A stretch of DNA of 64,000 nucleotides, taken from assembly GCA_964106645.2 (NCBI GenBank), contig OZ067049.1; one strand, written 5' to 3'. The notes under the pieces were generated by a model. That model worked only from the letters and a program-made list of their open reading frames with translations. It was not told where the DNA came from and ran no database searches. The stretch is from Podarcis pityusensis (taxonomy: Eukaryota). Made by a program: the position numbers and the translations under genes. This document shows, piece after piece, positions 15,480 to 62,481 of the stretch (within the stretch, counting starts at the first letter, position 1; every line of letters begins with the position of its first letter).

Positions 15480-16525
<1,046 letters not shown>

Positions 16526-23335: not shown

Positions 23336-23345
23336 ACATCAAGCC

Positions 23346-23774
23346 CCAGTAGTGATGTATGGAGAGCTGGACCATAAAGAAGGCTGATTGCCGAAGAATT
23401 GATGCTTTTGAATTATGGTGTTGGAGGAGACTCTTGAGAGTCCCATGGACTGCAAGAAGATCAAACCTCTCCATTCTTAATGAAATCAGCCCTGAATGCT
23501 CACTGGAAGAACAGATCCTGAAGCTGAGGCTCCAATACTTTGGCCACCTCATGAGAAGAGAAGACTCCCTGGAAAAGACCTTGATGTTGGGAAAGATTGA
23601 GGGCACAAGGAGAAGGGATGACAGAGGACGAGATGGTTGGACAGTGTTCTCAAAGCTACCAGCATGAGCTTGACCAAACTGTGGGAGGCAGTGGAAGACA
23701 GGAGTGCCTGGCGTGCTCTGGTCCATGGGGTCACGAAGAGTCAGACATGACTAAACGACTAAACAACAACAACA
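23346..23774 (+). mobile_element. 5'-truncated Bov-B LINE
   Basis: ESWTIKKADCRRIDAFELWCWRRLLRVPW...; (CAA)n tail; TSD ACATCAAGCC at 23336-23345 and 23775-23784. Confidence 0.95.
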
Positions 23775-24164
23775 ACATCAAGCCAGCTCTCAAAAAATTA
23801 ACACACACCGTATACTTCAAATATCAGTTAAGAGATTTTGCGTACTATTGGTCAGATAACATTGTTAACATTAGTAGAATTCACAACAACAAAAATGCTT
23901 GCCCCTAGAACATTTCACAGCTTCAGCTACCACAGACTGTCACTGAAAACAATGCATTGGTCAGTCTGAACCATGTCAAGTAAACTATGGAAGTAGCATA
24001 GCCACAAAACAAACTGTGCCAGTACTTTCTTTTCAAGTCTTAATTCCATAATGGGTACAATCTGAGGGAGCCACTACTCCCAGCCTGTGAACAGTAGTGG
24101 AACTTGGCTATCAGACATTTTGAAAATGTGATAGTTTACAGTACATTCTTGCAGCCTGATGCCA

Positions 24165-24230: not shown

Positions 24231-24359
24231 TATTTAATAAAAGGTCCTTACAACATAATGCAATTTAGTCCCATATGATTAAGCAATTATAAATAAATGA
24301 GCCTCCCCCCCTGAGAATAATGCACTCAGGTAAACTGGTTTGTGCAGATATTTTTGGGT

Positions 24360-24884
24360 AAGATACTTTGGTCATGACAACAGGCTACATCCAACTAAAT
24401 CCTACTTAGGGCAGACCCTTTGAAATTAAAGTTTGGATTTTTAATTCATTTCAGTGAGTCTACTCTGAGTAGGACTAGCATCCGAGGCAAGTGTGTGTGT
24501 GAGGGCAAATGAGGGCTGAGAGCAAATCTAAAAAGGATGGGACAGCTGCATATTCCTGCAATGCAGAGGGTTGGACTAGATGATCCTCAGGGTCCCTTCC
24601 AACCCTACAATATTATAATTCTAGGACAGGAATGTCCAATATGTCAATCTGGTCCCTACCACCCACTAGTGGGCGTTTCAGGATTCTAGGTGGGTGGTAG
24701 GAGATTCTATGGCACAAGGTGAATCCGCCTTCCATCGAGCACTGGTGGGTGGTAAGGAAATTTTACCATCAAGAAAGATGCATTAGTGAACGGCAGGTAT
24801 AAAAGGGTTGATTACTCCTGGTCTAGCCACTACACTGCACTTGTTCTCTGTTTTTTATATTTTGAGCCAGAGTATATTTGTTTA
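24360..24884 (+). repeat. Donor copy of an inverted duplication (partner 48015-48529); includes a CR1-SINE tail (~24537-24623) and a hAT MITE
   Basis: Colinear reverse-complement match from aagatactttggtca... to ...gagccagagtatatttgttt, with scattered substitutions and one 14-nt indel (24550-24563). Confidence 0.95.
24627..24820. mobile_element. hAT-Charlie-type MITE (duplicated at 48079-48272)
   Basis: CAGG...CCTG ends; one terminus reads caggggtaatcaacc in the second copy; flanked by TCTAG-centred 8-mers (ttctagga / gtctagcc). Confidence 0.65.
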
Positions 24885-25238
24885 GGGACACGGGTGGCGC
24901 TGTGGGTTAAACCACAGAGCCTAGGGCTTGCCGATCAGAAGGTCGGCGGTTAAAATCCTCGCAACAGGGTGAGATCCCATTGCTCAGTCCCTGCTCCTGC
25001 CAACCTAGCAGTTCAAACGCACATCAAAGTGCAAGTAGATAAATAGGTACCACTCTGGCAGGAAGGTAAACAGTGTTTCCGTGCGCTGCTCTGGTTCGCC
25101 AGAAGCGGCTTAGTCATGCTGGCCACATGACCCGGAAGCTGTACACTGGCTCCCTTGGCCAATAAAGTGAGATGAGCGCCGTAACCCCAGAGTCGTCTGC
25201 AACTGGACCTAATGGTCAGGGGTCCCTTTACCTTTACC
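24885..25238 (+). mobile_element. Sauria SINE (full length)
   Basis: Head gggacacgggtggcgctgtgggttaaacc; (ACCTTT)n tail; TSD TAT(A/T)TTTGTTTA at 24873-24884 and 25239-25250. Confidence 0.93.
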
Positions 25239-27029
25239 TATTTTTGTTTAGCAGTTGTCAGAAATCTGTTTTGGCTCTAAGTATTGTGAGAGATCAAAAT
25301 AATTTTGGATACCGCCTGCACCGAAGAAGCAAGAAAAAGACATCTCTTAAAATTGTTCCATTTGAATACCATCCTTCATTTGAAAATGCAAAACTGTACA
25401 GGCACGTATCATCTATTTCGGTTAATTGCCATTGTGATTACTGCAGAAAGCATCTACTGTGTTCGTGGCATCAACACTAACTGTAAAGCATCTAAAATGG
25501 AAACAAGTGCTAAAGTGATGGGAAATGGTCTTAAAATGATCTATGTAGGAAAGGGGAAATGGAATCGCTTGACTAGTAACAGCTTCCACAAATGGATGCT
25601 ACTAGTTTGCTAGCTACAAAAACAGTTGCATTCCTATACCATACATTTCCAACTGTATCTTGAAGAGCATCTTTTGGTCAAAGACTTGCTTGTTCTTACT
25701 TCAGTTCATCATCAATAAATTTCACTTTTCCCTGCTTCTGCCAAATTTGCTCTATCTTCTCGTTTAATAATGGAATGTTGGGTGGGTGGGGGGGAATTTG
25801 TTGCTTATGTTTTTATCACCCAGAGATTCATTTTTAAAGAATGAAAGAAGTCCAACATTTTCCTGCTTATCTGGGGTGCGTTATCACAATGCTGTCCTGT
25901 TCTAATAATTTGTTGCTGAAAGAAGGTAAAGCAAAGGGGAAACTTTTAACATATCTCTCCAAAGAGCTGAAACTGACTCTAGAAATCTGAATCACTAGAG
26001 AATAATTTGCTATGCTCCATAAGGGTACATAGCAATAACAGTTTCAGTTAATCACTCGCCATTGAAACCAAGAATTAGAGGCTAATTAGCGGGGTTCTTG
26101 TAAATATAGTTTGTTGTTGTTTTAATAGCATGGCAAAGTTGTCTCTTCTCATGATATGCCTTGGTTAATTCCTTTCAGAGTTGGTTGGTGGTTTTTGTTT
26201 TTTTAAAAAAACACGAAACGTTTCCTGCAAGCCTTAGTCACACAGTGGAAAACACAGCCAACAACTTATTGGGAAAAAAATATAAACCTTGCTATTCTTC
26301 TGGCACGTTGCTACTGTCACCGTTGGGAAATTATGGTACTCAGCCCATTTTGATTTCCTGACAAGAGAATACAGAGTTTCCCCCAAGTTATTTCTGCTTG
26401 CATGTAATTAAAATAGACATAATCATAACAATTACCCACATGACAATATTTTTTTCCTAGAAATTCAGTTAAGGATAAGAATTCATGCAAGGGCAGTCTT
26501 TAGTACTACAGTTGCTAGATTTCCAGTCATTAAAGCTTAACACATTATTGCTGAGCACAGCAAAATGATTATCTTTTAATTTCCAAATTATTGTACTAGT
26601 TTGCGTGGTGGTTCAGTTTTTTACAGTTCATTTACCATGGCTAATCTGCGGCTTCCAGCAACAGTTTGTAAATGGCACAATTAAAAAAGAAGACACAATA
26701 AGAGAATAGATTGCTTTAGAGATTGGTCGCTTGCTGATGCTCAGGCTGGAGAAATATACACCAAGCAAGACTTTCTAGGTGTTAAGTATCTCAGTGCTTC
26801 TGAGTGAGCTCATACCTTTCTGAAAGTGGACTTCAAGCTCTAAATTAGATGCCAGGCAAAGACATTTTTGTTCACTAAGGCCTTTGGTAACTAAGTTGGC
26901 CTCTACAGTGCTTCTCATCATTTAACATGGTGTTGTGGGATTTGTCCCTTTTATTTTGTTACCCTATAAGCATTTTTAGGTGTTTTGTACTGAAAATTGT
27001 TTTAATTTTTTTCTGGCTTTTCATTGTTT

Positions 27030-28680: not shown

Positions 28681-29035
28681 AAAAAGGTAAAGGGACCCCT
28701 GACCATTAGGTCCAGTCGTGGACGACTCTGGGGTTGCGGCGCTCATCTGGCTTTACTGGCCAAGGGAGCCGGCATACAGCTTCTGGGTCATGTGGCCAGC
28801 ATGACTAAGCCGCTTCTGGTGAACCGGAGCAGCGCACGGAAACACCGTTTACCCTCCCGCCAGAGCGGTACCTATTTATCTACTTGCACTTTGATGTGCT
28901 TTCGAACTGCTAGGTTGGCAGGAGCAGGGACCAAGCAATGGGAGCTCACCCCGTCATAGGGATTCGAACCACCAACCTTCTGATAGGCAAGTCCTAGGCT
29001 CTGTGGTTTAATCCACAGCGCCACCTGCGTCCCTC
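28681..29035 (-). mobile_element. Sauria SINE
   Basis: Reverse tail aaaaaggtaaagggacccc, reverse head; TSD GCACATTGAGT at 28670-28680 and 29036-29046. Confidence 0.94.
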
Positions 29036-31852: not shown

Positions 31853-34800
31853 CCCCTTCATGGATCACTGCCTTGCTGTGGCGAAGGGGCTTGAATAACT
31901 CAGAGAAGCTATGCCGTGCAAGGCCACCCAAGATGGACAGGTCATAGTGGAGACTTTTGACCAAACGTGATCCACCTGGAGCAGGAACCGGCAAGCCACT
32001 CCAGTATCCCTGCCAAGAAAACTCCATGGACAAAGACAACAGGCATATAAAAGTTATGACGCTGGAAGATGAGCCCCTCAGGTTGGAAGGCGTCCAACAT
32101 GCTACTGAGGAAGAGCAGAGGACAAGTACAAGTAGATTCAGAGCTGATGAAGCGGCTGGGCCAAAGCCGAAAGGACGCTCAGTTGCGGATATGCCTGGAA
32201 GCAAAAGGAAAGTCCAATGCTGTAAAGAAAAATATTGCATAGGAACCTGGAATGTAAGAACCATGAACCTTGGTAAGTTGGATCTGGTGAAAAATGAGAT
32301 GGCAAGAATAAATATTGACATCCTGGGCATCAGTGAACTAAAATGGACGGGAATGGGCGAATTCAGTTTGGATGACCATCATATCTACTACTGTGGGCAA
32401 GAATCCCGTAAAAGAAATGGAGTGGCCCTCACAGTCAACAAAAGAGTGTCAAAAGCTGTACTGGGATGCAATCTCAAAAATGATAGAATGATCTCGATAC
32501 GAATCCAAGGCAGACCTTTTAACATCACAGTAATCCAAGTTTATGCACCAACCACTGGTGCTGAAGAAACTGAAATTGACCAAGTCTATGAAGACTTACA
32601 ACACCTTATAGAAATGACACCAAAGAAGGATGTTCTTCTCATTATAGGGGATTGGAATGCTAAAGTAGGGAGTCAAGAGATAAAAGGAACAACTGGCAAG
32701 TTTGGCCTTGGAGTTCAAAAGGAAGCAGGGCAAAGGCTAATAGAGTTCTGCCAAGAGAACAAGCTGGTCATCACAAACACTCTTTTCCAATAACACAAGA
32801 GACGACTCTACACATGGACATCACCAGATGGGCAGCATCGAAATCAGATTGATTATATTCTCTGCAGCCAAAGATGGAGAAGCTCTATACAGTCAGCAAA
32901 AACAAGACCTGGAGCTGACTGTGGCTCAGATCATCAGCTTCTTATAGCAAAATTCAAGCTTAAACTGAAGAAAGTAGGAAAAACCACTGGGCCGGTAAGA
33001 TACAATCTAAGTCAAATCCCTTATGAATACACAGTGGAAGTGAGGAACAGGTTTAAGGATTTAGATTTGGTGGACAGAGTGGCTGAAGAACTATGGATGG
33101 AGGCTCATAACATTATGCAGGAGACAGCAACTAAAACCATCCCAATGAAAAGGAAATGCAAGAAAGCAAAGTGGCTGTCCAACGAGGCCTTACAAATAGC
33201 GGGGGAGAGAAGGCAAGCAAAATGCGAAGGAGATAGTGAAAGATACAGGAAATTGAATGCAGATTTCCAAAAAATAGCAAGTTGAGACAAGAAGGCCTTC
33301 TTAAACGAGCAATGCAAAGAAATAGAGGAAAACAATAGAATGGGAAAAACCAGAGATCTGTTCAAGAAAATTGGAGATATGAAAGGAACATTTCGTACAA
33401 AGATTTCCATAATAAAAGACAAAAGTGGAAAGGACCTAACAGAAGAAGAAGACATCAAGAAGAGGTGGCAAGAATACACAGAGGAACTATACCAGAAAGA
33501 AATGGATGTCTCGTATACCCCAGGTAGTGTGGTTGCTGACCTTGAGCCAGACATCCTGGAGAGTGAAGTCAAATGGGCCTTAGAAAGCACTGCTAATAAC
33601 AAGACCAGTGGAAGTGATGGTATTCCAGCTGAACTATTTAAAATTTTAAAAGATGATGCTGTTAAAGTGCTACACTCAATATGCCAGCAAATTTGGAAAA
33701 CTCAGCAGCGGCCTGAGGATTGGAGAAGATCAGTCTACATCCCAATCCCAAAGAAGGGAAGTGCCAAAGAATGCTCCAACTACCGCACAATTGCACTCAT
33801 TTCACACGCTAGCAAGGTTATGCTTAAAATTCTACAAGGCAGGCTTAAGCAGTATGTGGACCGAGAACTTCCAGAAGTGCAAGCTGGATTTCAAAGGGGC
33901 AGAGGAACCAGAGACCAAATTGCAAACATGCGCTGGATTATGGAGAAAGCTAGAGAGTTCCAGAAAGACATCTACTTCTGCTTCATTGACTATGCAAAAG
34001 CCTTTGACTGTGTCGACCACAGCAAACTATGGCAAGTACTTAAAGAAATGGGAGTGCCTGATCACCTCATCTGTCTCCTGAGAAATCTCTATGTGGGACA
34101 AGAAGCTACAGTTAGAACTGGATATGGAACAACTGATTGGTTCAAAATTGGGAAAGGAGTACGGCAAGGCTGTATATTGTCTCCCTGCTTATTTAACTTA
34201 TATGCAGAATTCATCATGCGAAAGGCTGGGCTGGGTGAATCCCAAACCGGAATTAAGATTGCCGGAAGAAATATCAACAACCTCAGATATGCAGATGACA
34301 CAACTTTGATGGCAGAAAGTGAGGAAGAATTAAAGAACCTTTTAATGAGGGTGAAAGAGGAGAGCGCAAAATATGGTCTGAAGCTCAACATCAAAAAAAC
34401 GAAGATCATGGCCACTGGTCCCATCACCTCCTGGCAAATAGAAGGGGAAGAAATGGAGGCAGTAAGAGATTTTACTTTCTTGGGCTCCATGATCACTGCA
34501 GATGGTGACAGCAGTCACGAAATTAAAAGACGCCTGCTCCTTGGGAGAAAAGCAATGACAAACCTAGACAACATCTTAAAAAGCAGAGACATTACCTTGC
34601 CAACAAAGGTCCGTATAGTAAAAGCCATGGTTTTCCCAGTAGTGATGTATGGAAGTGAGAGCTGGACCATAAAGAAGGCTGATCGCCAAAGAATTGATGC
34701 TTTTGAACTGTGGTGCTGAAGGAGACTCTTGAGAGTCCCATGGACTGCAAGAAGATCAAACGTATCCATTCTTAAGGAAATCAGCCCTGAATGCTCACTG

Positions 34801-36109: not shown

Positions 36110-36115
<6 letters not shown>

Positions 36116-36357
36116 CAGTGGTACCTCGGCTTAAGAACTTAATTCGTTCTGGAGGTCTGTTCGTAACCTGAAACTGTTCTTAACCTGAAGCACCACTTTA
36201 GCTAATGGGGCCTCCTGCTGCCGCAGTGCCGCCAGAGCCCGATTTCTGTTCTTATCCTGAAGCAAAGTTCTTAACCCGAGGTACTATTTCTGGGTTAGCG
36301 GAGTCTGTAACCTGAAGCGTCTGTAACCTGAAGCGTCTGTAACCCGAGGTACCACTG
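36116..36357. mobile_element. Tc1/mariner (Tigger-like) MITE, copy 2
   Basis: Same TIRs and body as 30111-30336; TA TSD. Confidence 0.93.
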
Positions 36358-36612
36358 TATAAACTTATAGTCCTCTCTAAAGGTTTTCTTGTGAAATTAT
36401 AAGGCATGAATGATGAAAGCAGATCAAACATAAAAAGAGACAAAGGGAGACTCCAGCACAAAAATTCTCAATAGGAATTCATATGCAGATGTTATGGTAA
36501 GTGAAGGGGGGGGGGGAGTTCATGTAAGGAAAGTTCCCTTCCCTCCTGATTTTGGATGCTCCTGACCTGCCTCAGCAACACCCCTCCCTCCACAATGCTC
36601 CATCTCCATCTC

Positions 36613-38526: not shown

Positions 38527-39195
38527 AAGGTAAAGGACCTCTGGATGGTTAAGTCTAGTCAAATTTGACTATTGGGTGCGGTGCTCATCTTGCTTTCAGG
38601 CCGAGGGAGCCAGCATTTGTTTGCAGACAGTGTTTCCAGGTCATGTTGCTAGGATGACTGAACCACTTTTAGGGCAATGGAACATGGTGATGGGAGCCAG
38701 AGCACACAGAAATGCCGTTTACTTCCCACCAGGTGGGTGATGCTGTGGTCTAAACCACTGAGCCTCTTGGGCTTGCCGCTCAGAAGGTCGGTGGTTCAAA
38801 TCCCCATGACAGGGTAAGCTGGCATTGCTCTGTCCCAGCTCCTGCCAACCTAGCAGTTCGAAAGGATGCCAGTGCAAGTAGATAAATAGGTACTGCTCTG
38901 GCAGGAAGGTAAGCGGCATTTCCTTGCGATCCGGCTTCCGTCACTGTGTCCCGTTGCATCAGAAGCAGTTTAGTCCTGGTGGCCACATGACCCAGAAAGC
39001 TGTGGACAAACGCCGGCTCCCTCGGCCTGAAAGCAAGATGAGGGCTGCAACCCCATAGTCGCCTTGGACTGGACTTAACCATCCAGGGATCCTTTACCTT
39101 TTTTTTTTTTTTAACCTTCCCACCGCAGCAGTACCTATATATCTACTGGCACTGATATGCTTTCAAACTGCTAGGTTGGCTGGAGCTGGGAGCTC
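38527..39195 (-). mobile_element. Sauria SINE (outer), interrupted by another Sauria SINE
   Basis: Reverse tail aaggtaaagg at 38527; body continues to 38730 and resumes at ~39116 (cttcccaccgcagcagtacctat...gctaggttggc). Confidence 0.85.
38731..39112 (+). mobile_element. Sauria SINE (inner, nested in opposite orientation)
   Basis: Head gggtgatgctgtggtctaaacc; tail cctttacc(T)n; TSD CTTCCCACC at 38722-38730 and 39116-39124. Confidence 0.88.
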
Positions 39196-42919: not shown

Positions 42920-43790
42920 CTCGTCAATACCATGACAGGTAGCCCCAGGATTCACTTTAGGTTACTGCAGCTCGGCTGTGTCAGAGGTGAAGTGCAGCAT
43001 CTGCAGCCCTGTCATCCAGAAAAATCCCTTCCTTCCTTAGCTGTCCAGTACAGAGAGGGCACCACCATCCTTCTCAGGGTGGTGTGTGAGGGCAGTGCAT
43101 AGTAAAGGATCCACTGGAACTACATGGATTCAGCCAGGGTGAACAAGAAGTCATTCAACTCCAACATCTCACTGATGTGGTTGGTGATCTGCATTGGACA
43201 CTTACATCTTGTGGGCCCATTCATCCCTCAGCCCAGTGTCCCCAGCCTAAGCTGTTTCAGCTTTTGGGGTTGACATGAGAGGTGTGTGAGAGGAGGACTT
43301 CACACTCTCACTCTGCCCTGCACCCCTCTAACCCTTACTGCAGGCTTCTCCAGCCTCGGCCCTCCAGATGTTTTGAGACTACAATTCCCAGCATCCCTGA
43401 CCACTGGTCCTGCTAGCTAGGGATCATGGGAGTTGTAGGCCAAAAACATCTGGAGGGCTGAGGTTGGGGAAGCCTGCCTTACTGCTTATCTTCTCTGAGC
43501 TTGCCTCACCCAACTCACCTTGGAAGGGACTTAAGTTGGTCTCTTCCAGAGGAGAGGGTTTTGGATCACCTGGGCTCGAGAGCCCAATCTAGAGTGGGTG
43601 GACAGGAATGTGTTTAGGGCCCCTCTGACCCTCCTCAGGGACAGCTCTGCCTGTGCAGGTGCATTCTAAAGCGGCTGGTGGTGTAGTGCCATGAAATCTT
43701 CCCTCTGCTCACCTGCTTACTGCAATATAGGCAGGTGTCATAGCTGGATCTGCTGCCACTCCAACGAGATCCCAAACCACGCTCTGCTGT
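42920..43790 (-). pseudogene. Fossil hAT (Ac/ZBED4-like) transposase with BED zinc finger
   Basis: Manual minus-strand translation: KQQSVVWDLV...DP/SYDTCLYCSKQVSRGKISWHYTTSRFRMHLHR (BED finger, ~43790-43650); QITNHISEMLELNDFLFTLAESM*FQWILYYALPSHTTLRRMVVPSLYWTAKE (~43190-43035); MLHFTSD (~43000-42980); GYLS (~42945-42933). Order matches ZBED4/Ac-type transposases. Confidence 0.8.
43341..43476. mobile_element. Palindromic hAT MITE
   Basis: Near-complete hairpin CAGGCTTCTCCAGCCTCGGCCCTCCAGATGTTTT...AAAACATCTGGAGGGCTGAGGTTGGGGAAGCCTG; 8-bp TSD CCTTACTG at 43333-43340 and 43477-43484. Older relatives at ~20630-20715, ~41035-41150 and ~53391-53518. Confidence 0.93.
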
Positions 43791-44404: not shown

Positions 44405-44589
44405 CCCTTTAAAGATCAACTGCTCCATGCACTACAAAAAGAGCTGGAGGAGAAGTGGACTTGCTCTTGCTAACCCCAATAACCTCAGAGTATGGGGTAA
44501 CCTGCCACTGCATACCATTGCTCCTCATGTCTACAGCAGTGAAAGTGCATTTCAGTTAGGTTGTGGTAGGGAACTCAAATGGCCTACGG

Positions 44590-45086
44590 CAGTGGTGACG
44601 AACCTTTTAGAGACCGAGTGCCCAAACTGCAACCAAAAACCCGCTTATTTTTCACAAAGTGTCAACACGGCAAAGTCATTGAGGTTTTTTTTTGGGGGGG
44701 GGGGATTGCGCAGGGATCTGGAGCTTTTTAGGGGGAATGCAGAAAATAACTAACACCGCTAAAAATGCTGCAGATCGCTTGCGTCAGCACAGCAAACATG
44801 TGTCTACAACTCACCAACAGCACACCGCCAGCTGGTTCGCGGGTGCGGAACTTCAAACAATGCGCGCTCTACGGGACGTTTACTGCTCGCAACAGCGTGG
44901 CCCCCCCTTGCAAAAACTCCGCCTGGCACCACTGCGGGCAGAGCACACTCTAAGGAGCACTTACCGCCTGCACTGGCATGGGGAGAGCGGATGGCCATTG
45001 TGCTTGCTGGGCCAATGGCTTGCATGCCCACAGAGAGGGTTCTGAGTGCCCACTCTGGCACGCATGCCATAGGTTCGCCACCACTG
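44590..45086. mobile_element. Non-autonomous hAT element
   Basis: TIR CAGTGGTG(A/G)CGAACCT at both ends; 8-bp TSD GCCTA(C/T)GG at 44582-44589 and 45087-45094; CpG-rich. Confidence 0.92.
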
Positions 45087-47656
45087 GCCTATGGCAATGC
45101 TTGTGCCTTTGCCCCCACCTCTGCCACTGAGGCTGCCACACAGCTTGCTATCAGCAGCACCATGTATATATACCTGAAGATTAGGTGCAATAAGGGATTG
45201 TTTACAATAGGAGGGTGTCTGTAGAATAATAATGCTAACAGTGATAAATGTGTATTGTGTGATTGTTATGCTTATAACAGTGAGTGTACGTAAAATAGCA
45301 TTGCAGTCCAGTAGAATAGATGGGCGGGTGAGACACATACTCACACACAAGGACACTAAGATTTAATAACAGAAATAATAATAGTAATGCAGACCATGGC
45401 TGATAAGTAGAAAAGAATTAAAAACTGCATGAATACACTAAATTAACTTCTACTACAGTGCAACAAGCAGTAATGTGTGTGTGGCTGTTTCCCCTGTCAC
45501 ACACAGAGAGAATTTAATAATACACACAAAGAATTCAATAATAATGACGAGGCAGTCTATGACTAATAAATCAAATCACTTGAGACAGATTAAATAAAAC
45601 AGACTGCACATGGAACTGAAAGTGAACTCCTCAGACCAGAGCTATTCTTAGGGGAAGAAAGATCACTGGCAGACAGCAGGATTATATCAAAAGGAACAGT
45701 AAGGATGTTAAGGTTGGTAAATAAGGGACTGGACTGGAACGACATAAACTGGTACTGGTAAAAAGGAACACATGGGCTAAAGAAAAGCCTGAAATGGTAG
45801 CACCTTTAAAACATTACTGGTTCACAGAGACAAATCTAGCATCGAACAAGAAGTACATGAAAGTGAAGTTACTTATTTACTTCAACTCTTAAAGCACTGG
45901 GATTGGAGAGCCTTAGTTAAATAATTCTCTCTGATTGCAAGTTAGACCTGTCAGTCACAGAAGAACTTACCCTTCTTTCCCCTCTCCCCACCCTGGCATT
46001 TTCTTTATGTGGCAAGCTTACAGATATTCATTTCATTTTTAGCTGATGCTTGTCTGAAGTGGTTTTTTATATCTGAAACACAGAGGTGTCACAGGTGCTT
46101 TCAGGTGCTGCTTTGACTCAGGCATATCAGGCACAGCCCTCTTTGCCTCAAACAATCCCAGATCCCCTCTGAAGTTTCCTGATTCAGTTGGGGATTCATC
46201 AGAATCCTCTGCATTACCTGATTGTGCAGCCCTGTCTAAGCCTATTGATATAAGTTGCTAAGTGTACTTTTGTAATTTCATGGGAGAGATGCTCATTAAA
46301 CCTTAACACACACACACCCTTAAAAAAAACACCTGTTGCATTTCCTGTAGCTAACCATGGTTATGGGTACATAAGTAAGAAATCTGCTGTCTAAGTGTAA
46401 TAGTACCCTGTCTTCTTTTCATCAGATGTACCATACTTGGCTGTGAGGAATCAGGAGGCCAATATCTTTGTAAGAGACACGTCCACAAGAAGAAGAGACA
46501 TGAAGCCGTTGAGGGGCTGTCATATTTAATTCTGATTACTCTTTCTCATCTGCCACTATTCTAAATTATGTTGGAACAGTGCCAGATAGTTCTCTCATTG
46601 TCACTCTAATGGGATTTAGATTGGTTGTTCTGATTACACGTTCTCCTCCTCCTGTTTATGCTGTTTTAGATCTTGTAAGGGATGTATCAAATAACTATTT
46701 TAAGTGCTCCTTAGGGATAGAGCAGAACTGACAACATGCATGTGTGTGTTTTAAAAAGCAAACATATCACTCTTTTGTACTGTTGAATCATTGTGAAGCA
46801 GCTTTCTAAATGAAAGCAGATAAACACCACCATTTTGCCTTTGAATATCTAGCTGCAAATATAGCTATCTTTCTAGCTATTCCTTTTTTATTTATATATA
46901 TATATATTTATATGCCACCCTTCCATGCAACTTGCAGGTTGAATAATTTAAAAACAACAACAACAAAGTAACTTAAAAATCAGTATAAAAATAAAGCAAT
47001 ACAAAATGAAAAATAAACAACTGCATTTGCTTGCAACTGACAATACATCAGAATTGGTGCCAGCCTAGCTTCTCTGCAGCAAATATTCCATAAGCTATAT
47101 AATGCATCATATTATATTACTTAGAGACAACTGTAATTAAGCTGTATATAAATTATCAAAATAAATAAAACAACTAAGTAGGGTGCTATCTATGTACCTA
47201 ATCTATCAATGTATCAGAATCATAAGAGTCAATGTCCAAATACACATTGATTAATGAAAAGTAACCTGAAATGTGTAATTGTTACTGTAAAAGGTTTCTG
47301 ACAAGATTTTATTGAAAGTCTTATTCTTCTAATGTTAGACTTGCCTGCAGGTAGTAATGTGAGGGTTACCCTCTTTTCCTGGGAATCTGAGAGCCAAACT
47401 ACATGTGATGCTCCTGCAGCTTTACCCACTATATGAATTAATGAATAGCAGCTATATCAGAAAGGGGCTTATTGACAATGGAATTTCTGGAAGCGTGCAG
47501 AAAGGAATAAGCACTTAACTGGCAGTATATTCCACTGTATTTCTGGAAGTGGCTTTTTATGTTGTGTGAAAGCTCATATATAATGTGGAAATTTGTGGTT
47601 GGGGAAGAGTGAAAATGGAATAAACTTGGAACAGTACATTAGAATGCAGGGAGCAT

Positions 47657-48554
47657 AAAAGGTAAAGGTAAAGGGACCCCTGACCATTAGGTCCAGTCGT
47701 GACCGACTCTGGGGTTGCGGCGCTCATCTCGCTTTATTGGCTGAGGGAGCCGGCGTACAGATTCCAGGTCATGTGGCCAACATGACTAAGCCGCTTCTGG
47801 CGAACCAGAGCAGCGCACGGAAACGCCGTTTACCTTCCTCCCAGAGCGGTACCTATTTATCTACTTGCACTTTGACGTGCTTTTGAACTGCTAGGTTGGC
47901 CGGAGCAGGGACCGAGCAGCAGGAGCTCACCCTGTTGCAGGGATTTGAACCCCCGACCTTCTGATCGGCAAGCCCTAGGCTCTGTGGTTTAACCCACAGC
48001 ACCACCCGCATCCCAAAACAAATATACTCTGGCTCAAAATATAAAAACCAGAGAACAAGTGCAGTGTAGTGGCTAGACCAGGGGTAATCAACCCTTTTAT
48101 ACCTACTGCTCACTAATGCATCTTTCTTGATGGTAAAATTTCCTTACCATCCACCAGTGCTCGATGGAAGGAGGATTCAGCTTGTGCCGTAGAACCCCCT
48201 ACTGCCCACCTAGAATCCTGAAATGCCCACTAGTGGGCGGTAGGGACCAGGCTGACATATTGGACATTCCTGCCCTAGAATTATAATATTGTAGGGTTGG
48301 AAAGGACCCTGAGGATCATCTAGTCCAACCCTCTGGCAGCTGTCCCATCCTTTTTAGATTTGCTCTCAGCCCTCATTTGCCCTCCTACACACACACGGTT
48401 GCCTCAGGTGCTGGTTCTACTCAGAGTAAACTCACTGAAATGAATTAAAAATCCAAACTTTAATTTCAAAGGGTCTGCCCTAAGTAGGATTTAGTTGGAT
48501 GTAGCCTGTTGTTATGACCAAAGTATCTTTAACCCACAGCGCCACCTGCCTCCC
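47657..48554 (-). mobile_element. Composite Sauria SINE: 27-nt SINE head + ~515 bp captured intronic DNA + complete SINE
   Basis: Perfect 12-bp TSD TGCAGGGAGCAT at 47645-47656 and 48555-48566; full SINE 47657-48014; captured segment 48015-48529; extra SINE head 48528-48554. Confidence 0.93.
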
Positions 48555-48586
48555 TGCAGGGAGCATGGTGAGGGCCAAAATACCTC

Positions 48587-49760
48587 TAATAATAATAATA
48601 ATAATAATAAATTTTATTTATATCCCGCCCTCCCCAGCCGAAGCTGGGCTCAGGGCGGCTAACAACAATCAAAATAATCCAACATACTAAAAACATTCAT
48701 TATAAAATTAATTAAAATCAAATTGATGGCAACCATTAAGCAAAATTCTGTGCAGATTGCCAGAGGAGGGGGTCAGGCTGCGCCCTGACCAAAGGCCTGG
48801 TGGAACAGCTCTGTCTTGCAGGCCCTGCGGAAAGATGTCAGGTCCCGCAGGGCCCTAGTCTCTTGTGACAGAGTGTTCCACCAGATTGGAGCCGCAGCCA
48901 AGAAAGCCCTGGCTCTAGTTGAGGCCAGCCTAACCTCTCTGTGGCCTGGGATCTTCAGGATGTTTTTATTTGCAGACCATAAATTTCTCTGTGGGACATA
49001 CCAGGAGAGGCAGTCCCGTAGGTACGAGGGTCCTAGGCCGTATAGGGCTTTAAAGGTTAGAACCAGCACCTTAAACCTGATCCTGTACTCCACCGGGAGC
49101 CAGTGCAGCTGGTATAGTACCGGATGAATATGATCTCGCAGCGAAGACCCCATAAGGAGTCTCGCCACGGCATTCTGCACCCGCTGGAGTTTCTGGGTCA
49201 GTCTCAAGGGCAGCCCCACGTAGAGCGAGTTACAATAATCCAGTCTGGAGGTGACCGTCGCGTGGATCACAGTGGCTAGGTCAGGGCGAGAGAGATAAGC
49301 AGCCAACTGCTTAGCTTGGCGGAGATGAAAAAATGCCGCCTTTGTTATAGCTGTAATCTCCATAGAGAGGGGGGTATCGAAGATTACACCCAAACTCTTA
49401 ACGGATGATGCTGGCACTAATTGCACCCCCGCAAGAGATGGGAGTTGCCCCCTCAATCCCATATCGCCCCGTCCCAGCCAGAGGACCTCTGTCTTCGAAG
49501 GATTTAACTTCAACCTGCTCCCACGTAACCATCCAGCCACAGCCAAACATCGAGAGCCGATGTTTCATCCAGAAACCTACCAAGCTGTTCAGCAACCGCT
49601 CTCTCAATGACCTTACCCAGGAATGGAAGATTCGAAACCGGGCGGTAATTGGATAGATCTAAGGGATCTAATGATGTTTTCCTTAAGAGCGGACGCACCA
49701 CTGCCTCCTTCAGTTCCCCTGGGAATATCCCGGTGCCAAGGGACAAATTGATGATATCAC
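48587..49760 (-). mobile_element. L2 LINE (second family), 5'-truncated and internally deleted
   Basis: [19 protein letters not shown] joined almost directly to [19 protein letters not shown]...VTSRLDYCNSLYVGLP...LHWLPVEYRIRFK...; (TAA)n tail at ~48587-48612. Confidence 0.92.
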
Positions 49761-50369
49761 TCTAGCAGCTACCTAGGTATATTTACCTGATTTACATGTA
49801 AAATGGGAGTGGAGCTCTATTTTTTATATAAAAAGGGGCACAGAGGGGGAGGGAACGATCCCATTCTCACTTTACTCACTGTAAGCAGTTGCCGCCCATC
49901 CAAGCTCAAATACTCATATTTGAGTCAGTCTGGGAGAGAACTGCTTTCAGGTAAGGAGGCAGAAAGTGTGGGGTACATCTCTTTGCCCTACATACTCCTT
50001 TTCACATCTTCTCCCTCTTTATAAGTGAACAGTGTAGACATGTGGATGCAATACCTATCAAGTCTCCACTCATACCGCTGCATGGCACCCCAATTTCCGA
50101 GTGGTGTGGAATTCCAGGGGTTCCAAGTGCTTAACCAGGGTTCATGTTTCCTTTTGGAAATGAGGCACAGCGGAGACTTTGGTGTCTTTATGATATGTGG
50201 TTTATTTATACATATATACAACCTGAGCCTATGATGGAGGGGTTCACAGCATTAACACCCAACAAGGGTCTTGTTTCTCCCCATAGCCACCACCTTGGAT
50301 TCAAGCAGAGATCAGGCATGTTTCTCACTCTTGGGTTTCTGTCTGCTTCTAGCCCAGCTCACATACACT

Positions 50370-50520
50370 CAGGGTTTTTTCAGGGGAACTCACAGGAACT
50401 CAGTTCTGGCACCTCTCAGACGGATTCCAGCACCTCTCAGGGTGCCATTGCCACTCTAACAGAATGAGGGAGGTGTTTGTGGTGCGTTCCAGCACCTCTT
50501 TTTCTAGAAAAATAGCACGG
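50370..50520. mobile_element. Short hAT MITE
   Basis: Imperfect TIR cagggtttttt ... aaaaatagcacgg; perfect 8-bp TSD CATACACT at 50362-50369 and 50521-50528; internal ttc(c/t)(a/g)gcacctct repeats. Confidence 0.82.
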
Positions 50521-52156
50521 CATACACTCAACTCTGGCTTTTGTCTTTCTAAGTGCCACCCATTTTCTTTCTGGCACAGAGCAGCTTCCTTTCTTATACT
50601 AATGACTCATACTTAGGACCATTACCAAGAAGCGGACCTGGCTATTCCTACAGTAGAATCCTTGCTGGATCCAGGAATTAGAAGGCACTCAGACATACAG
50701 CCTAACCATTGTCTCCTCTCCCCCACCCCCAAACCCTCACAACATTATGTTTGTCATCTCTCACATAAATGTATGGCCTATGAAGTACCAGGAATTGGAA
50801 CAGAGCTGATATGTTTCAAAAAAAAGGCTAGTTTGATAGCATCTTATTGAATTTCTCAGTATGGTTTGGAATTTAGATATAAGCCTAGGACTTGGCTAGC
50901 ACTTTGGTACTGTATTAAAGATATGGGCAAAGAATGAGAAATCATTAAAGGGTTTTAGGCTATGATTTTAAAGCTATGCTGCCTGTCATTATTTCATCTC
51001 CGTTAGTACTGCAGAGGACTTACTTGAAAGGCTGTGGCATTAGGCTGGATGAATTAAGGCAATCATACTAACCGCTGCCTTTATATTCTTAGTCTTTCAG
51101 TCCAAAGGTTCGTTCTTTCTTTGTTCGGAGACCATTTCTTCTTGACAGGATTAGCCATCCTTAATGAGACAGAAAACCCCTCTTGGGGTTTGACAACTAT
51201 TATGTTTGCCTTTTTCTTCTTCTTATTGAAAGGAGACATGTTAGACATGAAGGGAGAATGTAACAACAACAAAGGAAGGGAAAATATATATCTGCCGTCA
51301 TCATCTGTGTTTAGTTTCCAAACAATTCTTCAAAAAAATTATAGATATGAACTACTCATTTACCCTTTGTGAGGTCTACAGGCTAGCTCCATTGGTTGAA
51401 ATCATGGCTATTACTGGAATGGCGTTATGAAAGGTGAAATTGTCGCCACTGACTAAGCTGGACTATTAAACAGCAGGTGAAAAGCAAGAGATGGGAAGAG
51501 AAAGCTGGTAACACAATGATGTAAGAGAAAGCAACATCCAGGGTGTAATCACAGGTCAGGAGTCAGTGTCAGATGTGATGATGTTCCTTCATTCTTCTTT
51601 CACAAAGATTCTGAACAGTCTTCAAGAATGTGATGACTATCAGAGTTTTAGGAAGGTTGTACGTAAGACATTAATACAAAAGCTACATTCCTACCTACAC
51701 TGAGGTTTGCAATGCTTGAGGTTTCTGATTATCTCCAGAAAACCAACTTTTTCCCATCAGAAGCTCGTAGATAGTTATCACTTTATCATTTTCTAGCTCA
51801 TTCGCTGACACTGTATATAGTGCGTGAATCTCGTCTTCTTGCCAGCTTTCATTAGGTGCTTTTTGTTTCAGAAAGGTCTTATTATGCTGCTTGAAGTTTT
51901 CACTGTATATATTTTAATGGTGAGGTGCACCTAAGGTTGTTGGTTTTTTTGTGGTCAATTTCCTTCCTTCTTTTAGCTTCCCTTCCTTTCTAACAAACTG
52001 TGACCCATTCTTTTGTGGGTGCTGACAGATTTGTGGGTGTTCAATGGGTCTTTTTTTACTTTCATTTCTGAAGAGCCAACAGTCCCTCTGCTTACTCCAA
52101 CCGTACTTTTAGCTGGGGCCAGATAAGCCAAGGGGAGCCTAAAGGCATTTGCAGTA

Positions 52157-52398
52157 CAGTGGTACCTCGGGTTTCATACGGTTCAGGTTACATATGCTTC
52201 AGGTTACAGACTCCGCTAACCCAGAAATAGTACCTCGGGTTAAGAACTTTGCTTCAGGATGAGAACAGAAATCGTGTTCCGGTGGCGTGGCAGCAGCAGG
52301 AGGCCCCATTAGCTAAAGTGGTGCTTCAGGTTAAGAACAGTTTCAGGTTAAGAACGGACCTCCGGAACGAATTAAGTACTTAACCCGAGGTACCACTG
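52157..52398. mobile_element. Tc1/mariner (Tigger-like) MITE, copy 3 (opposite orientation)
   Basis: Same TIRs and body; TA TSD. Confidence 0.93.
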
Positions 52399-54504
52399 TA
52401 CATTGTGTGAATTTTGAAGGATTTTAATTTAGGGTCACCTCTCCGGAGGTGTGATATTAATGAAACAACCAAACCCAAGATATATTTTTCATGCTCTGTT
52501 AACAGAATTTTTGCTGGATAAAATCGCCAACATATTTTTAAGAAAGGCTATGGTGCAAAAGGTATCAGAGATGACTTAATTAATCCTTTCTCTCTCTTTT
52601 TTGCTTTTTCACAGTACACTTCTTTCTACCTGACAAATAAAGCACCTTTCCCCAAATATGCTTTGCAATGTTGTGGGTTGCTTTTGCATTTTATGTGGTA
52701 ATGCCCAGAGGCAATCTTGTTCAGCCCAGTAATGTTACTTCTGAATGCTGAGCTGGCAATTTCATTTCTGCTTTCAGCTAAGCTCAACCAATAGCTTTCT
52801 CCCAGACTGCTTAATTCAAAAAGTAGGAGTGAATTTTCAATCCCCAGAGAATTTTTTTCCCATCTGCAACTGCTAATGGAAACATGCCTCAGAGGCAGTA
52901 TAGCACAGCTGGGAATTTAGGCTTGTCTTCTCAAAGAAATCTGAGTACAAACCTATTTAGCTCCACACAGCATGTTTACTAAAAAGCATTGTACTGCCCA
53001 CAATGCAAAGGAATGTATGTGGATGGGCAAGCTAAAAATTACTTAATACAAAAACCCTATGAAAAATAGCAGTGGAAGCTAGTAAGGATTGTTTTTGTAT
53101 GTTGTTCCAGGTGCTAAAGTTGACCTTGCAGTGAACAGTAAAAAAAAAGGACATAACTTTTATTAATTTAGAGAATTTATATTCTATTGTTTGTAAGTGT
53201 GTTTACAATATGAGGAAGCATAAATTATGACACCTTTGCATGGAGTAACACTGTTTTGGTTTCAGAACTAAAATGTTAGTTATGTGTTATGGTTTTGCTG
53301 TATAATTGGTCCGGTTCATATTTCTGAAGCACCCAAAGAAATATGTATCCTAATACATGACAAACAATTCTGAGTAGAATAGAGTTAAACAGGGATATGG
53401 TTTTCCAGATATTGTTGAATTATAGCTTTCATCAACTCTAGCCATTGGCCATGCTGATTGGGGCAGATGGGAGTTGGAATTCAGCAACATCTAGAGGGCA
53501 ACAGGTTTTCCACTCCTGGACTAAAAATGGCTCATGACTCTTTTACACCAGGCAAGGAGAGAATGAGAGGGAAGGAGAGAAGAGAGAAAGAGAGAGAGAG
53601 ATTTTCTAAGAGAAGCAGATTAAAAAACAGAACAGATGAGAAGCAGTATCATGGAAACAGGAAGCCAGATAATGGGTATTATAGGAGAGAAGAGATAAAA
53701 CCTACCAATGTAAGAAGTGAAAATTTTCATGTAACACAATTTCTTAAATATTAGAGGAGCAGCATAATGAGCCATTATATAGAGGTGAGGATCAGGGATG
53801 TGAATCCTTGTGCTGAGCTTATTAAACCACCATGCAGAGGGATACTAGAGTTGCCTCCATTCTTGCTGCCCTGATCCCATTGCCAATTGTAGAAAATAAA
53901 TTTAAGGAATATCTACAGTGTGCTAAAGTAGGCCAGTTTAAAGAAGGATAACCCTCATGGAAGAAAATAACATTTTACATTTACTGTTGGGCAACCACTC
54001 CTTCCCACCTTATCAGATCTTCTGAAATCTGGCAACAGCTCTATCAAAACTGTTTCCAGAAAGTGCCAAGGAAAAATCCCACATGAACCTGCAGAGGAAA
54101 AACCAATTTTGGAAGAAGAAGAACCACCGCTCAGAAACAACAGTGAGGTCCAGCTTGAGTTACGCATTGCAAATACCCATGTGCTTGAAGATCTCCTGTT
54201 GTAATAAATGAGATTGAAAACTGCTTGATTTCAGTAGGATCATGCCCAATGTTAATTATAATTATTGTCATCAACATCATCATCAAATCTATAATCACTG
54301 GGGGGAAAGCACTGATTCACTAAATCTGAAGTGCTTGTTGTGTATCCCAAACTGGTGATTATAACCATGATGTTCTGTCACTGAACATTACATAATGTCA
54401 ACAACAACCTTCAGAAATAGCCATGTTATCTTAGGCCTCTCAGTCTTTTTCAACTAAGAAGGTTGAGTGCTTGCTTTGAATGCAGAAGGGTCTAGACTCT
54501 AGGT

Positions 54505-56809: not shown

Positions 56810-57050
56810 TCAGCTCCCGTGTACCACGTGTACCACGCTAAACCGGCATGGAGCAGAGCATGGACTGCCTTCCGTGACGCTGGCCGGCTTCCCATTGGCT
56901 GCAGAAAGCTCCTGCAGCCAATGGGAAGCTGGGCACGCCTCCTCCGCGCTGGAAGGAGCACCGGAAATAGCGTTTGCACACCCTCCGGCCCACCGCGGCG
57001 TCTGTGGGACCGTGAACCGGCCCAAGCCTCAAAAACTTTGCCAACTCCTG
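56810..57050. mobile_element. hAT-Charlie element, one end only; related to 54505-54750
   Basis: End tctgtgggaccgtgaaccggccc...aaaaactttgccaactcctg is the reverse complement of the 54505 terminus pattern; CpG-rich. Confidence 0.7.
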
Positions 57051-61708: not shown

Positions 61709-61853
61709 TAGAATTGTAGAGTTGGAAGGGACCCTGCGGTTCATCTAGTCCAACCCCCTGCTATGCAGGAATATGCAGCTGTCCCATACAGAGATTGAGC
61801 CTGCAACTTTGGCATTATCAGCACCACACTCTAACCAACTGAGTTATCCAGGT
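61709..61853 (-). mobile_element. tRNA-Ile-derived SINE with CR1 tail
   Basis: Minus strand taactcagttggttagagtgtggtgctgataatgccaaagttgcaggctcaatctctgtatggg follows vertebrate tRNA-Ile; then acagctgcatattcctgcatagcagggggttggactagatga...cccttccaactctacaattcta. Confidence 0.85.
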
Positions 61854-62010: not shown

Positions 62011-62473
62011 AACCATATAGTTAAAGCTATGGTTTCCCCAGTAGTGATGTATGGAAGTGAGAGCTGGACCATAAAGAAGGCTGATCGCCGAAGAATTGAT
62101 GCTTTTGAATTATGGTGCTGGAGGAGACTCTTGAGAGTCCCATGGACTGCAAGAAGATCAAACGTATCCATTCTGAAGGAAATCAGCCCTGAGTGCTCAC
62201 TGGAAGGACAGATCCTGAAGCTGAGACTCCCATACTTTGGCCACCTCATGAGAAGAGAAGACTCCCTGGAAAAGACCCTGATGTTGGGAAAGATGGAGGG
62301 CACAAGGAGAAGGGGGTGACAGAGGACAAGATGGTTGGACAGTGTTGTTGAAGCTACCAGCATGAGTTTGACCCAACTGCGGGAGGCAGTGGAAGACAGG
62401 AGTGCCTGGCGTACTCTGGTCCATGGGGTCAACGAAGAGTCGGACACGACTAAACAACTAAACAACAACAACA
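62011..62473 (+). mobile_element. 5'-truncated Bov-B LINE
   Basis: PVVMYGSESWTIKKADRRRIDAFELWCWRR...; (CAA)n tail; TSD AATAATTA at 62003-62010 and 62474-62481. Confidence 0.94.
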
Positions 62474-62481
62474 AATAATTA

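What the first reader, a model, noticed from the sequence alone, without database searches (positions are those of the whole stretch)
47645..48566. A SINE that captured ~515 bp from the flank of another SINE 23 kb away (inverted templated insertion inside one TSD)
Seen: one perfect 12-bp TSD (TGCAGGGAGCAT) encloses, on the minus strand, three parts: a 27-nt Sauria SINE head (48554-48528), ~515 bp matching 24360-24884, and a complete Sauria SINE (48014-47657). The matched segment is exactly the 5' flank of the SINE at 24885. That SINE has both copies of its own TSD while the 48 kb site has only the 5' copy, so the direction is 24 kb to 48 kb. The distal junction lies at imperfect microhomology (donor TGGGTAAG vs SINE head TGGGTTAAA). 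The two SINE bodies share gcaacagggtgag in the 5' part but differ near the 3' end (gtcgtctgcaact vs gtcggtcacgact). Inference: a break near the head of a pre-existing SINE was repaired by ectopic strand invasion into the other SINE, copying past the homology and rejoining by microhomology. The alternative is double template switching by Bov-B RT onto the nascent KCNH8 pre-mRNA, in which the donor SINE is in sense orientation. Either way SINE pairs would be moving non-SINE DNA, including a MITE and a CR1-SINE tail, within a gene.
Basis: partly seen in the sequence, partly recalled or inferred. Interest (0 to 1): 0.8.

Follow-up and report, generated by a model that had tools for sequence, protein, structure and literature searches.

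The report
Jumping gene copied a neighbour's flank
In a lizard gene's first intron, a short jumping element inserted with about 510 bases copied from beside a related element 23 kb away; this kind of integration accident is known from human LINE-1, and here it appears as a single fossil case.

Summary
The structure is real. One perfect 12-bp TSD encloses a 27-nt Sauria (Squam1) SINE head, a 513-bp inverted copy of 24362-24884, and a full SINE. The copy is 5.1% diverged, so it is not an assembly duplicate. Direction is 24 kb to 48 kb. Both sites appear to lie in intron 1 of a KCNH gene, and the donor is in sense.

Dating gives the acceptor SINE the same age as the copying event (Bayes factor 2.5-7 against later repair). 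The distal junction keeps the SINE spelling, which fits DNA-to-DNA joining better than a return to RNA.

Best reading (0.45): during its own Bov-B-driven insertion the new SINE's cDNA invaded the nearby SINE, copied past its head, and rejoined by microhomology. Rivals: later break repair (0.27) and double template switching by RT (0.22). Closest known: templated or chimeric L1 insertions and duplication-dependent strand annealing.

No reads or orthologues were examined; the run search listed none. The scan noted similar, unchecked cases on other pieces of this genome (s1-711359, s1-717263). No function is shown.

The parts
48555..48566 (-). 5' copy of the 12-bp TSD; a T-run lies 11-14 nt upstream, as in the Bov-B target signature
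   Evidence: signature from PMC13295347
48528..48554 (-). 27-nt Sauria/Squam1 SINE head, starting exactly at SINE position 1
48015..48527 (-). 513-bp copy of donor flank 24362-24884, 5.1% diverged
48415..48489 (-). copy of a palindromic MITE-like remnant (donor 24400-24474, 30-nt arms)
48079..48272 (-). copy of a hAT-like MITE (donor 24627-24820; imperfect CAGG terminal repeats, TCTAG target core); family label from own knowledge
48015..48026 (-). carried-over 5' copy of the donor SINE's TSD
47657..48014 (-). full-length Sauria SINE; 5' part probably donor-derived, 3' part and tail from a different source copy
47645..47656 (-). 3' copy of the 12-bp TSD
24355..24361 (+). donor microhomology (TGGGT then AA) at the distal junction, just after a T-run
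24362..24884 (+). donor flank, the native 5' neighbour of the donor SINE
24885..25238 (+). donor Sauria SINE with its own TSD (24873-24885 and 25239-25251) and a full Tn-TA target signature
16007..16082 (+). coding part of exon 1 of a KCNH (EAG-family) channel gene, followed by a GTAAGT splice donor; KCNH8 by recalled N-terminal sequence

Best explanation
The copy was made during the insertion of the 48-kb SINE, with DNA as the borrowed template. (1) Bov-B machinery cut the target and reverse-transcribed a SINE RNA from its ACCTTT tail: inferred from the TSD, own tail and upstream T-run. (2) The top target strand had gained the first 27 nt of the SINE, and the still single-stranded cDNA was broken or frayed beyond that point: inferred. 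(3) The cDNA paired with the homologous SINE 23 kb away, and synthesis ran through its head, its TSD and 523 bp of flank: the product is shown, the invasion is inferred. (4) The extended end annealed to the head-bearing end at the imperfect TGGGT/AA microhomology and was sealed, keeping a clean TSD: junction shown, end joining inferred. The direction of synthesis cannot be read; the head-bearing strand could equally have been the primer. The result is an inverted 513-bp intragenic duplication with no evidence of function.
For: A single perfect TSD encloses everything, and the head starts at SINE position 1. The age of the acceptor's own SINE parts relative to the copying time fits at or below 1, with an upper bound of 1.4-2.3; Bayes factor 2.5-7 for simultaneous against later repair over 16 model settings. 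Only 2 of 15 CpG sites have decayed in the acceptor's 3' half, against 7 of 15 in the donor and 5 of 15 in the 29-kb copy. The 3' ends differ by a 2-nt non-CpG variant, where donor and 29-kb copy agree, and by their tails. Five derived CpG changes are shared up to position 175 and none after, with one ambiguous site (208) set aside. The junction keeps the SINE spelling, as expected if two DNA ends annealed with a bulge (inference). Precedent: templated chimeric L1s attributed to cDNA pairing with nearby homologous DNA (10.1101/2024.08.27.596794); incoming T-DNA picking up sequence from a homologous locus, dependent on Pol theta (PMC9299229).
Against: The dating rests on about 31 CpG sites and three young copies, with no genome-wide consensus; it cannot exclude repair soon after insertion. 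The tract is weak (hypergeometric p=0.058; log-likelihood gain 1.4-1.9; the control pair shares 4 decays by chance). The junction argument fails if the donor lost 2 nt later. The published L1 templated insertions are mostly under 250 bp and within 15 bp of the site, unlike this one. Step 2 is not observed.
Confidence: 0.45

Rival explanations
1. Later break repair. A normal SINE sat at 48 kb. A double-strand break at position 27 was repaired by one-sided invasion of the 24-kb SINE, copying past the homology, then end joining to the head; this resembles duplication-dependent strand annealing.
For: It gives the same final structure and explains the SINE-type junction spelling. The model is published for breaks inside repeats (PMC3276153). 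The 14-bp gap in the new copy resembles, imperfectly, the jump signature described there.
Against: The acceptor SINE is not measurably older than the copying event (Bayes factor 2.5-7 against). After extension, 27 nt of true head homology was available and was not used.
Confidence: 0.27
2. Double template switch by Bov-B reverse transcriptase: SINE RNA, then the nascent KCNH pre-mRNA holding the donor SINE in sense, then back to the SINE RNA head.
For: It fits the simultaneous dating equally well. The donor is in sense, and no exon-2 motif lies in the window, so both sites appear to be in intron 1. The more distant sense copy was used rather than the slightly nearer antisense copy at 28683-29034. 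The switch falls just before a T-run. TSD-flanked tripartite chimeras are published (PMC2104539).
Against: A cDNA that used TGGGT to hop back would carry the donor spelling, and the SINE spelling is what is found; the model needs a later 2-nt donor deletion or a 1-in-2000 coincidence. Sense orientation has a 50% prior. Germ-line transcription of this gene was not tested.
Confidence: 0.22
3. A fragment or circle made of donor flank plus head inserted into the head of an existing SINE, so that the 27-nt head behaves like a long target duplication.
For: The insert is bounded by TGGGT-type repeats at both ends. The scan noted a head-duplicating insert elsewhere (s1-725643, unchecked).
Against: The second head is simply contiguous with the flank in the donor. 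The donor is intact. The model needs recombination in 27 bp or less and predicts no shared body mutations, whereas five are seen. It also needs an older acceptor SINE.
Confidence: 0.03
4. A plain 5' transduction of the donor, a dispersed composite family, or an assembly artefact.
For: The flank is a mosaic of repeats. No reads were seen. An 8-nt direct repeat happens to bracket the donor segment (24349 and 25239).
Against: 5% divergence with indels excludes a duplicated assembly path. The 3' ends differ from the donor's, and a transduction would not add a head. The donor SINE's own TSD shows the flank is native there. Landing within 23 kb by chance in a genome of about 1.5 Gb (assumed from P. 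muralis) is about 3 in 100,000.
Confidence: 0.03

Closest known systems
Templated / chimeric L1 insertions made by SDSA-like pairing of the cDNA (Gilbert et al. 2005 as cited in 10.1101/2024.08.27.596794; the original paper was not held)
   Same: Non-element genomic DNA is duplicated into a retroposon during integration, attributed to the cDNA pairing with nearby homologous DNA.
   Different: Here it is an RTE-clade SINE, the template is 513 bp and 23 kb away rather than under 250 bp within 15 bp, and the element's own 5' head is recovered inside a clean TSD.
Duplication-dependent strand annealing (Fiston-Lavier et al. 2007, as described in PMC3276153)
   Same: A repeat copy pairs with an ectopic copy, and the neighbouring DNA is duplicated.
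   Different: That model starts from a break in a resident repeat; here the acceptor dates to the event itself. The duplication is also far smaller than the 37.5-kb case in that paper.
Tripartite chimeric retrogenes from double RT template switching (PMC2104539, PMC4476161)
   Same: Three parts inside one TSD.
   Different: Published parts are abundant RNAs (SINE, snRNA, LINE); here the middle part is local intronic sequence entered through homology.
Ectopic gene targeting of T-DNA (PMC9299229)
   Same: An incoming DNA acquires sequence from a homologous locus yet sits elsewhere; end joining by Pol theta is required.
   Different: It concerns engineered DNA in plants, with no retroposon and no TSD.
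Sauria SINE / Squam1 mobilised by Bov-B (PMC13295347, PMC10670947)
   Same: Head, ACCTTT tail, TSD of at least 10 bp with an upstream T-run.
   Different: PMC13295347 has no occurrence of 'template switch', 'chimeric', 'microhomology' or 'transduction'; PMC10670947 has none of 'gene conversion', 'dimer' or 'nested'.

Membership tests
Sauria/Squam1 SINE | About 350-nt body with the family head and an (ACCTTT)n tail | tested here: met
   the head matches P. muralis sequences printed in the supplement of PMC13295347, compared by eye
Sauria/Squam1 SINE | Bov-B target signature: T-run about 10 nt upstream, TSD starting TA | tested here: inconclusive
   Donor fits fully; acceptor has the T-run but its TSD starts C|A, as does the ordinary 29-kb copy
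Insertion-coupled templated chimera | One TSD encloses element plus captured DNA | tested here: met
Insertion-coupled templated chimera | Captured DNA has a local source and is entered through element homology | tested here: met
   seamless flank, donor TSD and head
Insertion-coupled templated chimera | Capture is simultaneous with insertion | tested here: inconclusive
   Favoured, Bayes factor 2.5-7; no orthologues available
Duplication-dependent strand annealing | Break in a resident, older repeat | tested here: inconclusive
   Acceptor not older than the event; an age ratio up to 1.4-2.3 is not excluded
Duplication-dependent strand annealing | Jump signatures: gaps bounded by microhomology, or short tandem repeats in the new copy | tested here: inconclusive
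   The 14-bp gap lies between TGCA repeats but is off by one base
Double RT template switch | Middle template is an RNA in sense orientation | tested here: inconclusive
   Orientation fits; 50% prior; expression not tested
Double RT template switch | Junction carries the sequence of the cDNA as copied | tested here: not met
   SINE spelling kept, not donor spelling, unless the donor changed later
5' transduction | Flank plus the same element's 3' end, with no extra head | tested here: not met
   Different 3' variant and tail, and an extra head
Dispersed composite family | Multiple unlinked copies of the composite | not testable with these tools
   Only two copies in the window; the genome cannot be searched

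The most novel reading that the evidence does not exclude
In lacertid lizards, Squam1 insertions regularly detour onto a neighbouring SINE copy, as DNA or as nascent pre-mRNA, and return to their own head. With about 100,000 copies per genome, this would be a recurring route for moving flanking DNA, and sometimes exons, tens of kilobases within genes, with a recognisable head-insert-SINE signature.
Probability: 0.25. Interest if true: 0.62.

Novelty: new variant of a known kind. Interest (0 to 1): 0.4.

Why it matters
How non-LTR retroposons finish their 5' junction, and how often the intermediate borrows other templates, is known mostly from human L1 in cell culture and tumours. A fixed germ-line example from an RTE-driven SINE, with donor, TSD and both junctions readable, extends that to another clade. 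If the head-insert-SINE pattern recurs, donor orientation and distance would directly test a DNA against an RNA template. Such chimeras could also confuse SINE-based phylogenetic markers. The single event moves only old repeat fragments inside an intron, and no biological effect is shown.

Tried and rejected
(1) Sequencing runs: one search, filtered for PACBIO on 44500-52100; none was listed.
(2) A quasi-palindrome across the TSD/head junction (48543-48570) as a break-prone hairpin: folding no better than shuffles (z 0.03 and -1.45); rejected.
(3) The donor as a self-contained composite: only an 8-nt AT-rich repeat brackets it, against a 12-13-nt TSD at the SINE itself; rejected.
(4) A published SINE consensus for frequency tests: none found in the supplement by the terms searched.
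(5) Gilbert 2005 and two other papers looked up by id were not held; Gilbert 2005 is cited through the 2024 preprint.
(6) Paper searches for an exact precedent returned nothing or nothing relevant; this is not evidence of absence.
(8) The big protein searches were not needed and not used.

Full report
Observation. A self-comparison of the window finds one long match beyond the dispersed repeats: 24355-25242 (+) against 48536-47657 (-), 894 columns, 91% identity. Read on the minus strand, the 48-kb site has a 12-bp TSD (48566-48555), a 27-nt SINE head (48554-48528), 513 bp matching 24362-24884, a full SINE (48014-47657), and the second TSD copy (47656-47645). The TSD is perfect and occurs only twice in the window. 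The flank copies differ at 26 of 509 columns with three gaps; outside CpG sites the difference is 3.7%. That divergence rules out an assembly duplicate.

Direction. The donor SINE has both copies of its own TSD, with the T-run and TA start described for Sauria SINE targets (PMC13295347). The acceptor carries only the 5' copy. The 14-bp gap is a loss in the acceptor, since a paralogous repeat at 61713-61787 aligns to the donor over an equal 75 nt. The donor is not itself a composite element. The copied segment is a mosaic of a palindromic MITE-like remnant, a dispersed repeat tail and a hAT-like MITE with spacers. A distant master landing within 23 kb of its source is very unlikely, so the copy is local (inference).

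Context. A KCNH-family first exon lies at 16007-16082 on the + strand with a splice donor. KCNH8 is my reading of its N-terminus from memory; the structure search shows only the family. Short motif probes found no exon 2 in the window, so both sites appear to be in intron 1, the donor in sense and the acceptor in antisense. A near full-length Bov-B with a 13-bp TSD lies between them. The SINE heads resemble Podarcis muralis sequences, so the genome is probably a lacertid (inference).

Is the acceptor SINE a chimera? Probably, but the evidence is moderate. Donor and acceptor share five same-direction CpG decays up to SINE position 175 and none in the 15 sites after it; one ambiguous site at 208, where both differ from the 29-kb copy, was set aside. 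The acceptor has 9 of 16 sites decayed in its 5' half and 2 of 15 in its 3' half (Fisher p=0.02, with the boundary chosen after the fact). The conditional test of sharing gives p=0.058, the unrelated donor/29-kb pair shares four decays, no private non-CpG change is shared, and a tract improves the log-likelihood by only 1.4-1.9. Near the 3' end the acceptor differs at two adjacent non-CpG bases where the donor and the 29-kb copy agree, and it has its own tail. So the 3' end came from another source copy.

When did it happen? A likelihood model of CpG decay and non-CpG changes, calibrated on the flank, estimates the age of the acceptor's own parts relative to the copying time. The best value is at or below 1 in nearly all settings, with a 95% upper bound of 1.4-2.3. 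Against repair at a random later time, the Bayes factor is 2.5-7 across four boundaries and four variants of the model. The donor is about 1.1-1.5 times as old as the event. This favours capture during insertion but does not exclude repair soon after.

The distal junction. The exact overlap is AA, with TGGGT beside it after a 2-nt slip; random head/flank pairs do this well at frequency 0.0005. The product has the SINE spelling, not the donor's. A cDNA that copied the donor's TGGGT and hopped back to RNA would pass on the donor spelling. Two DNA ends annealing with a bulge can pass on either. This favours a DNA-level join unless the donor later lost two bases (inference). A hairpin at the head junction was tested and rejected.

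Mechanism. Timing points to the insertion itself and the junction points to DNA ends. The model that satisfies both is an insertion intermediate handled as a break: the single-stranded cDNA pairs with the nearby SINE, synthesis runs through head, TSD and flank, and the end rejoins the target strand that already carried 27 nt of head (0.45). Later repair of a resident SINE gets 0.27, double RT switching through the nascent pre-mRNA 0.22, and the remaining readings 0.06. Insertion-coupled readings together get about 0.67.

Known relatives. Templated chimeric L1 insertions ascribed to SDSA-like pairing are described in human tumours, usually short and next to the site. Duplication-dependent strand annealing covers breaks in resident repeats. 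TSD-flanked tripartite chimeras cover double RT switches. Ectopic gene targeting is an analogy for pick-up followed by end joining. I found no report of this structure for Sauria SINEs in the papers I could search. First-stage notes on other pieces of this genome describe similar events; they are unchecked leads and I could not see their sequences.

Limits. The one run search listed none, so no reads or orthologues were examined. The statistics rest on three young copies with ancestral CpG sites inferred from them.

Verdict. A real, well-preserved fossil of a known kind of integration accident, with an unusual long-range donor and recovery of the element's head. No function is shown. Interest 0.4.

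Noticed in passing
window:31853-35101 (+): Near full-length Bov-B LINE (about 3.25 kb) with a perfect 13-bp TSD (31840 and 35102); endonuclease and RT domains present, reading frame interrupted by stops near 32791 and 33283; an internal tandem duplication seems present near the 3' end.
   Followed up: partly
window:38527-39191: An older Sauria SINE on the minus strand is split by a plus-strand SINE (about 38731-39115) with a 9-bp TSD (38722 and 39116): ordinary nested insertion.
   Followed up: yes
window:30109-30340, 36114-36359, 52155-52400: Three copies, 92-95% alike, of a roughly 240-bp element with terminal inverted repeats and TA flanks, like a Tc1/mariner MITE.
   Followed up: partly
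window:24349-24356 and 25239-25246: An 8-nt direct repeat brackets the donor segment at both limits of the copied region; probably chance in AT-rich DNA, but unexplained.
   Followed up: partly
window:24885-25060 and 47657-48014: All ten CpG decays in the donor's 5' half are G-to-A on the + strand, and five of the acceptor's six private decays are too; this strand bias is unexplained and may be chance.
   Followed up: no
window:48586-49760 (-): A LINE fragment (L2-like by recalled sequence; no Pfam hit for 48776-49564) ends in an (ATT)n tail about 20 bp from the acceptor TSD.
   Followed up: no
window:1-405, 23344-23775, 62013-62476 (+): Short 5'-truncated Bov-B 3' ends, 87-94% alike; those at 23 kb and 62 kb appear to have TSDs.
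   Followed up: no
window:7168-7241, 43340-43477, 56881-56935: Palindromic stretches; the second looks like a MITE and the first is centred on an (AT)n run.
   Followed up: no
PMC13295347 supplement, Figure S6 file: Two P. muralis Bov-B copies are preceded by the 5' half of a Sauria SINE fused to the LINE start, one inside a single TSD: a further hint of SINE-LINE chimeras.
   Followed up: no
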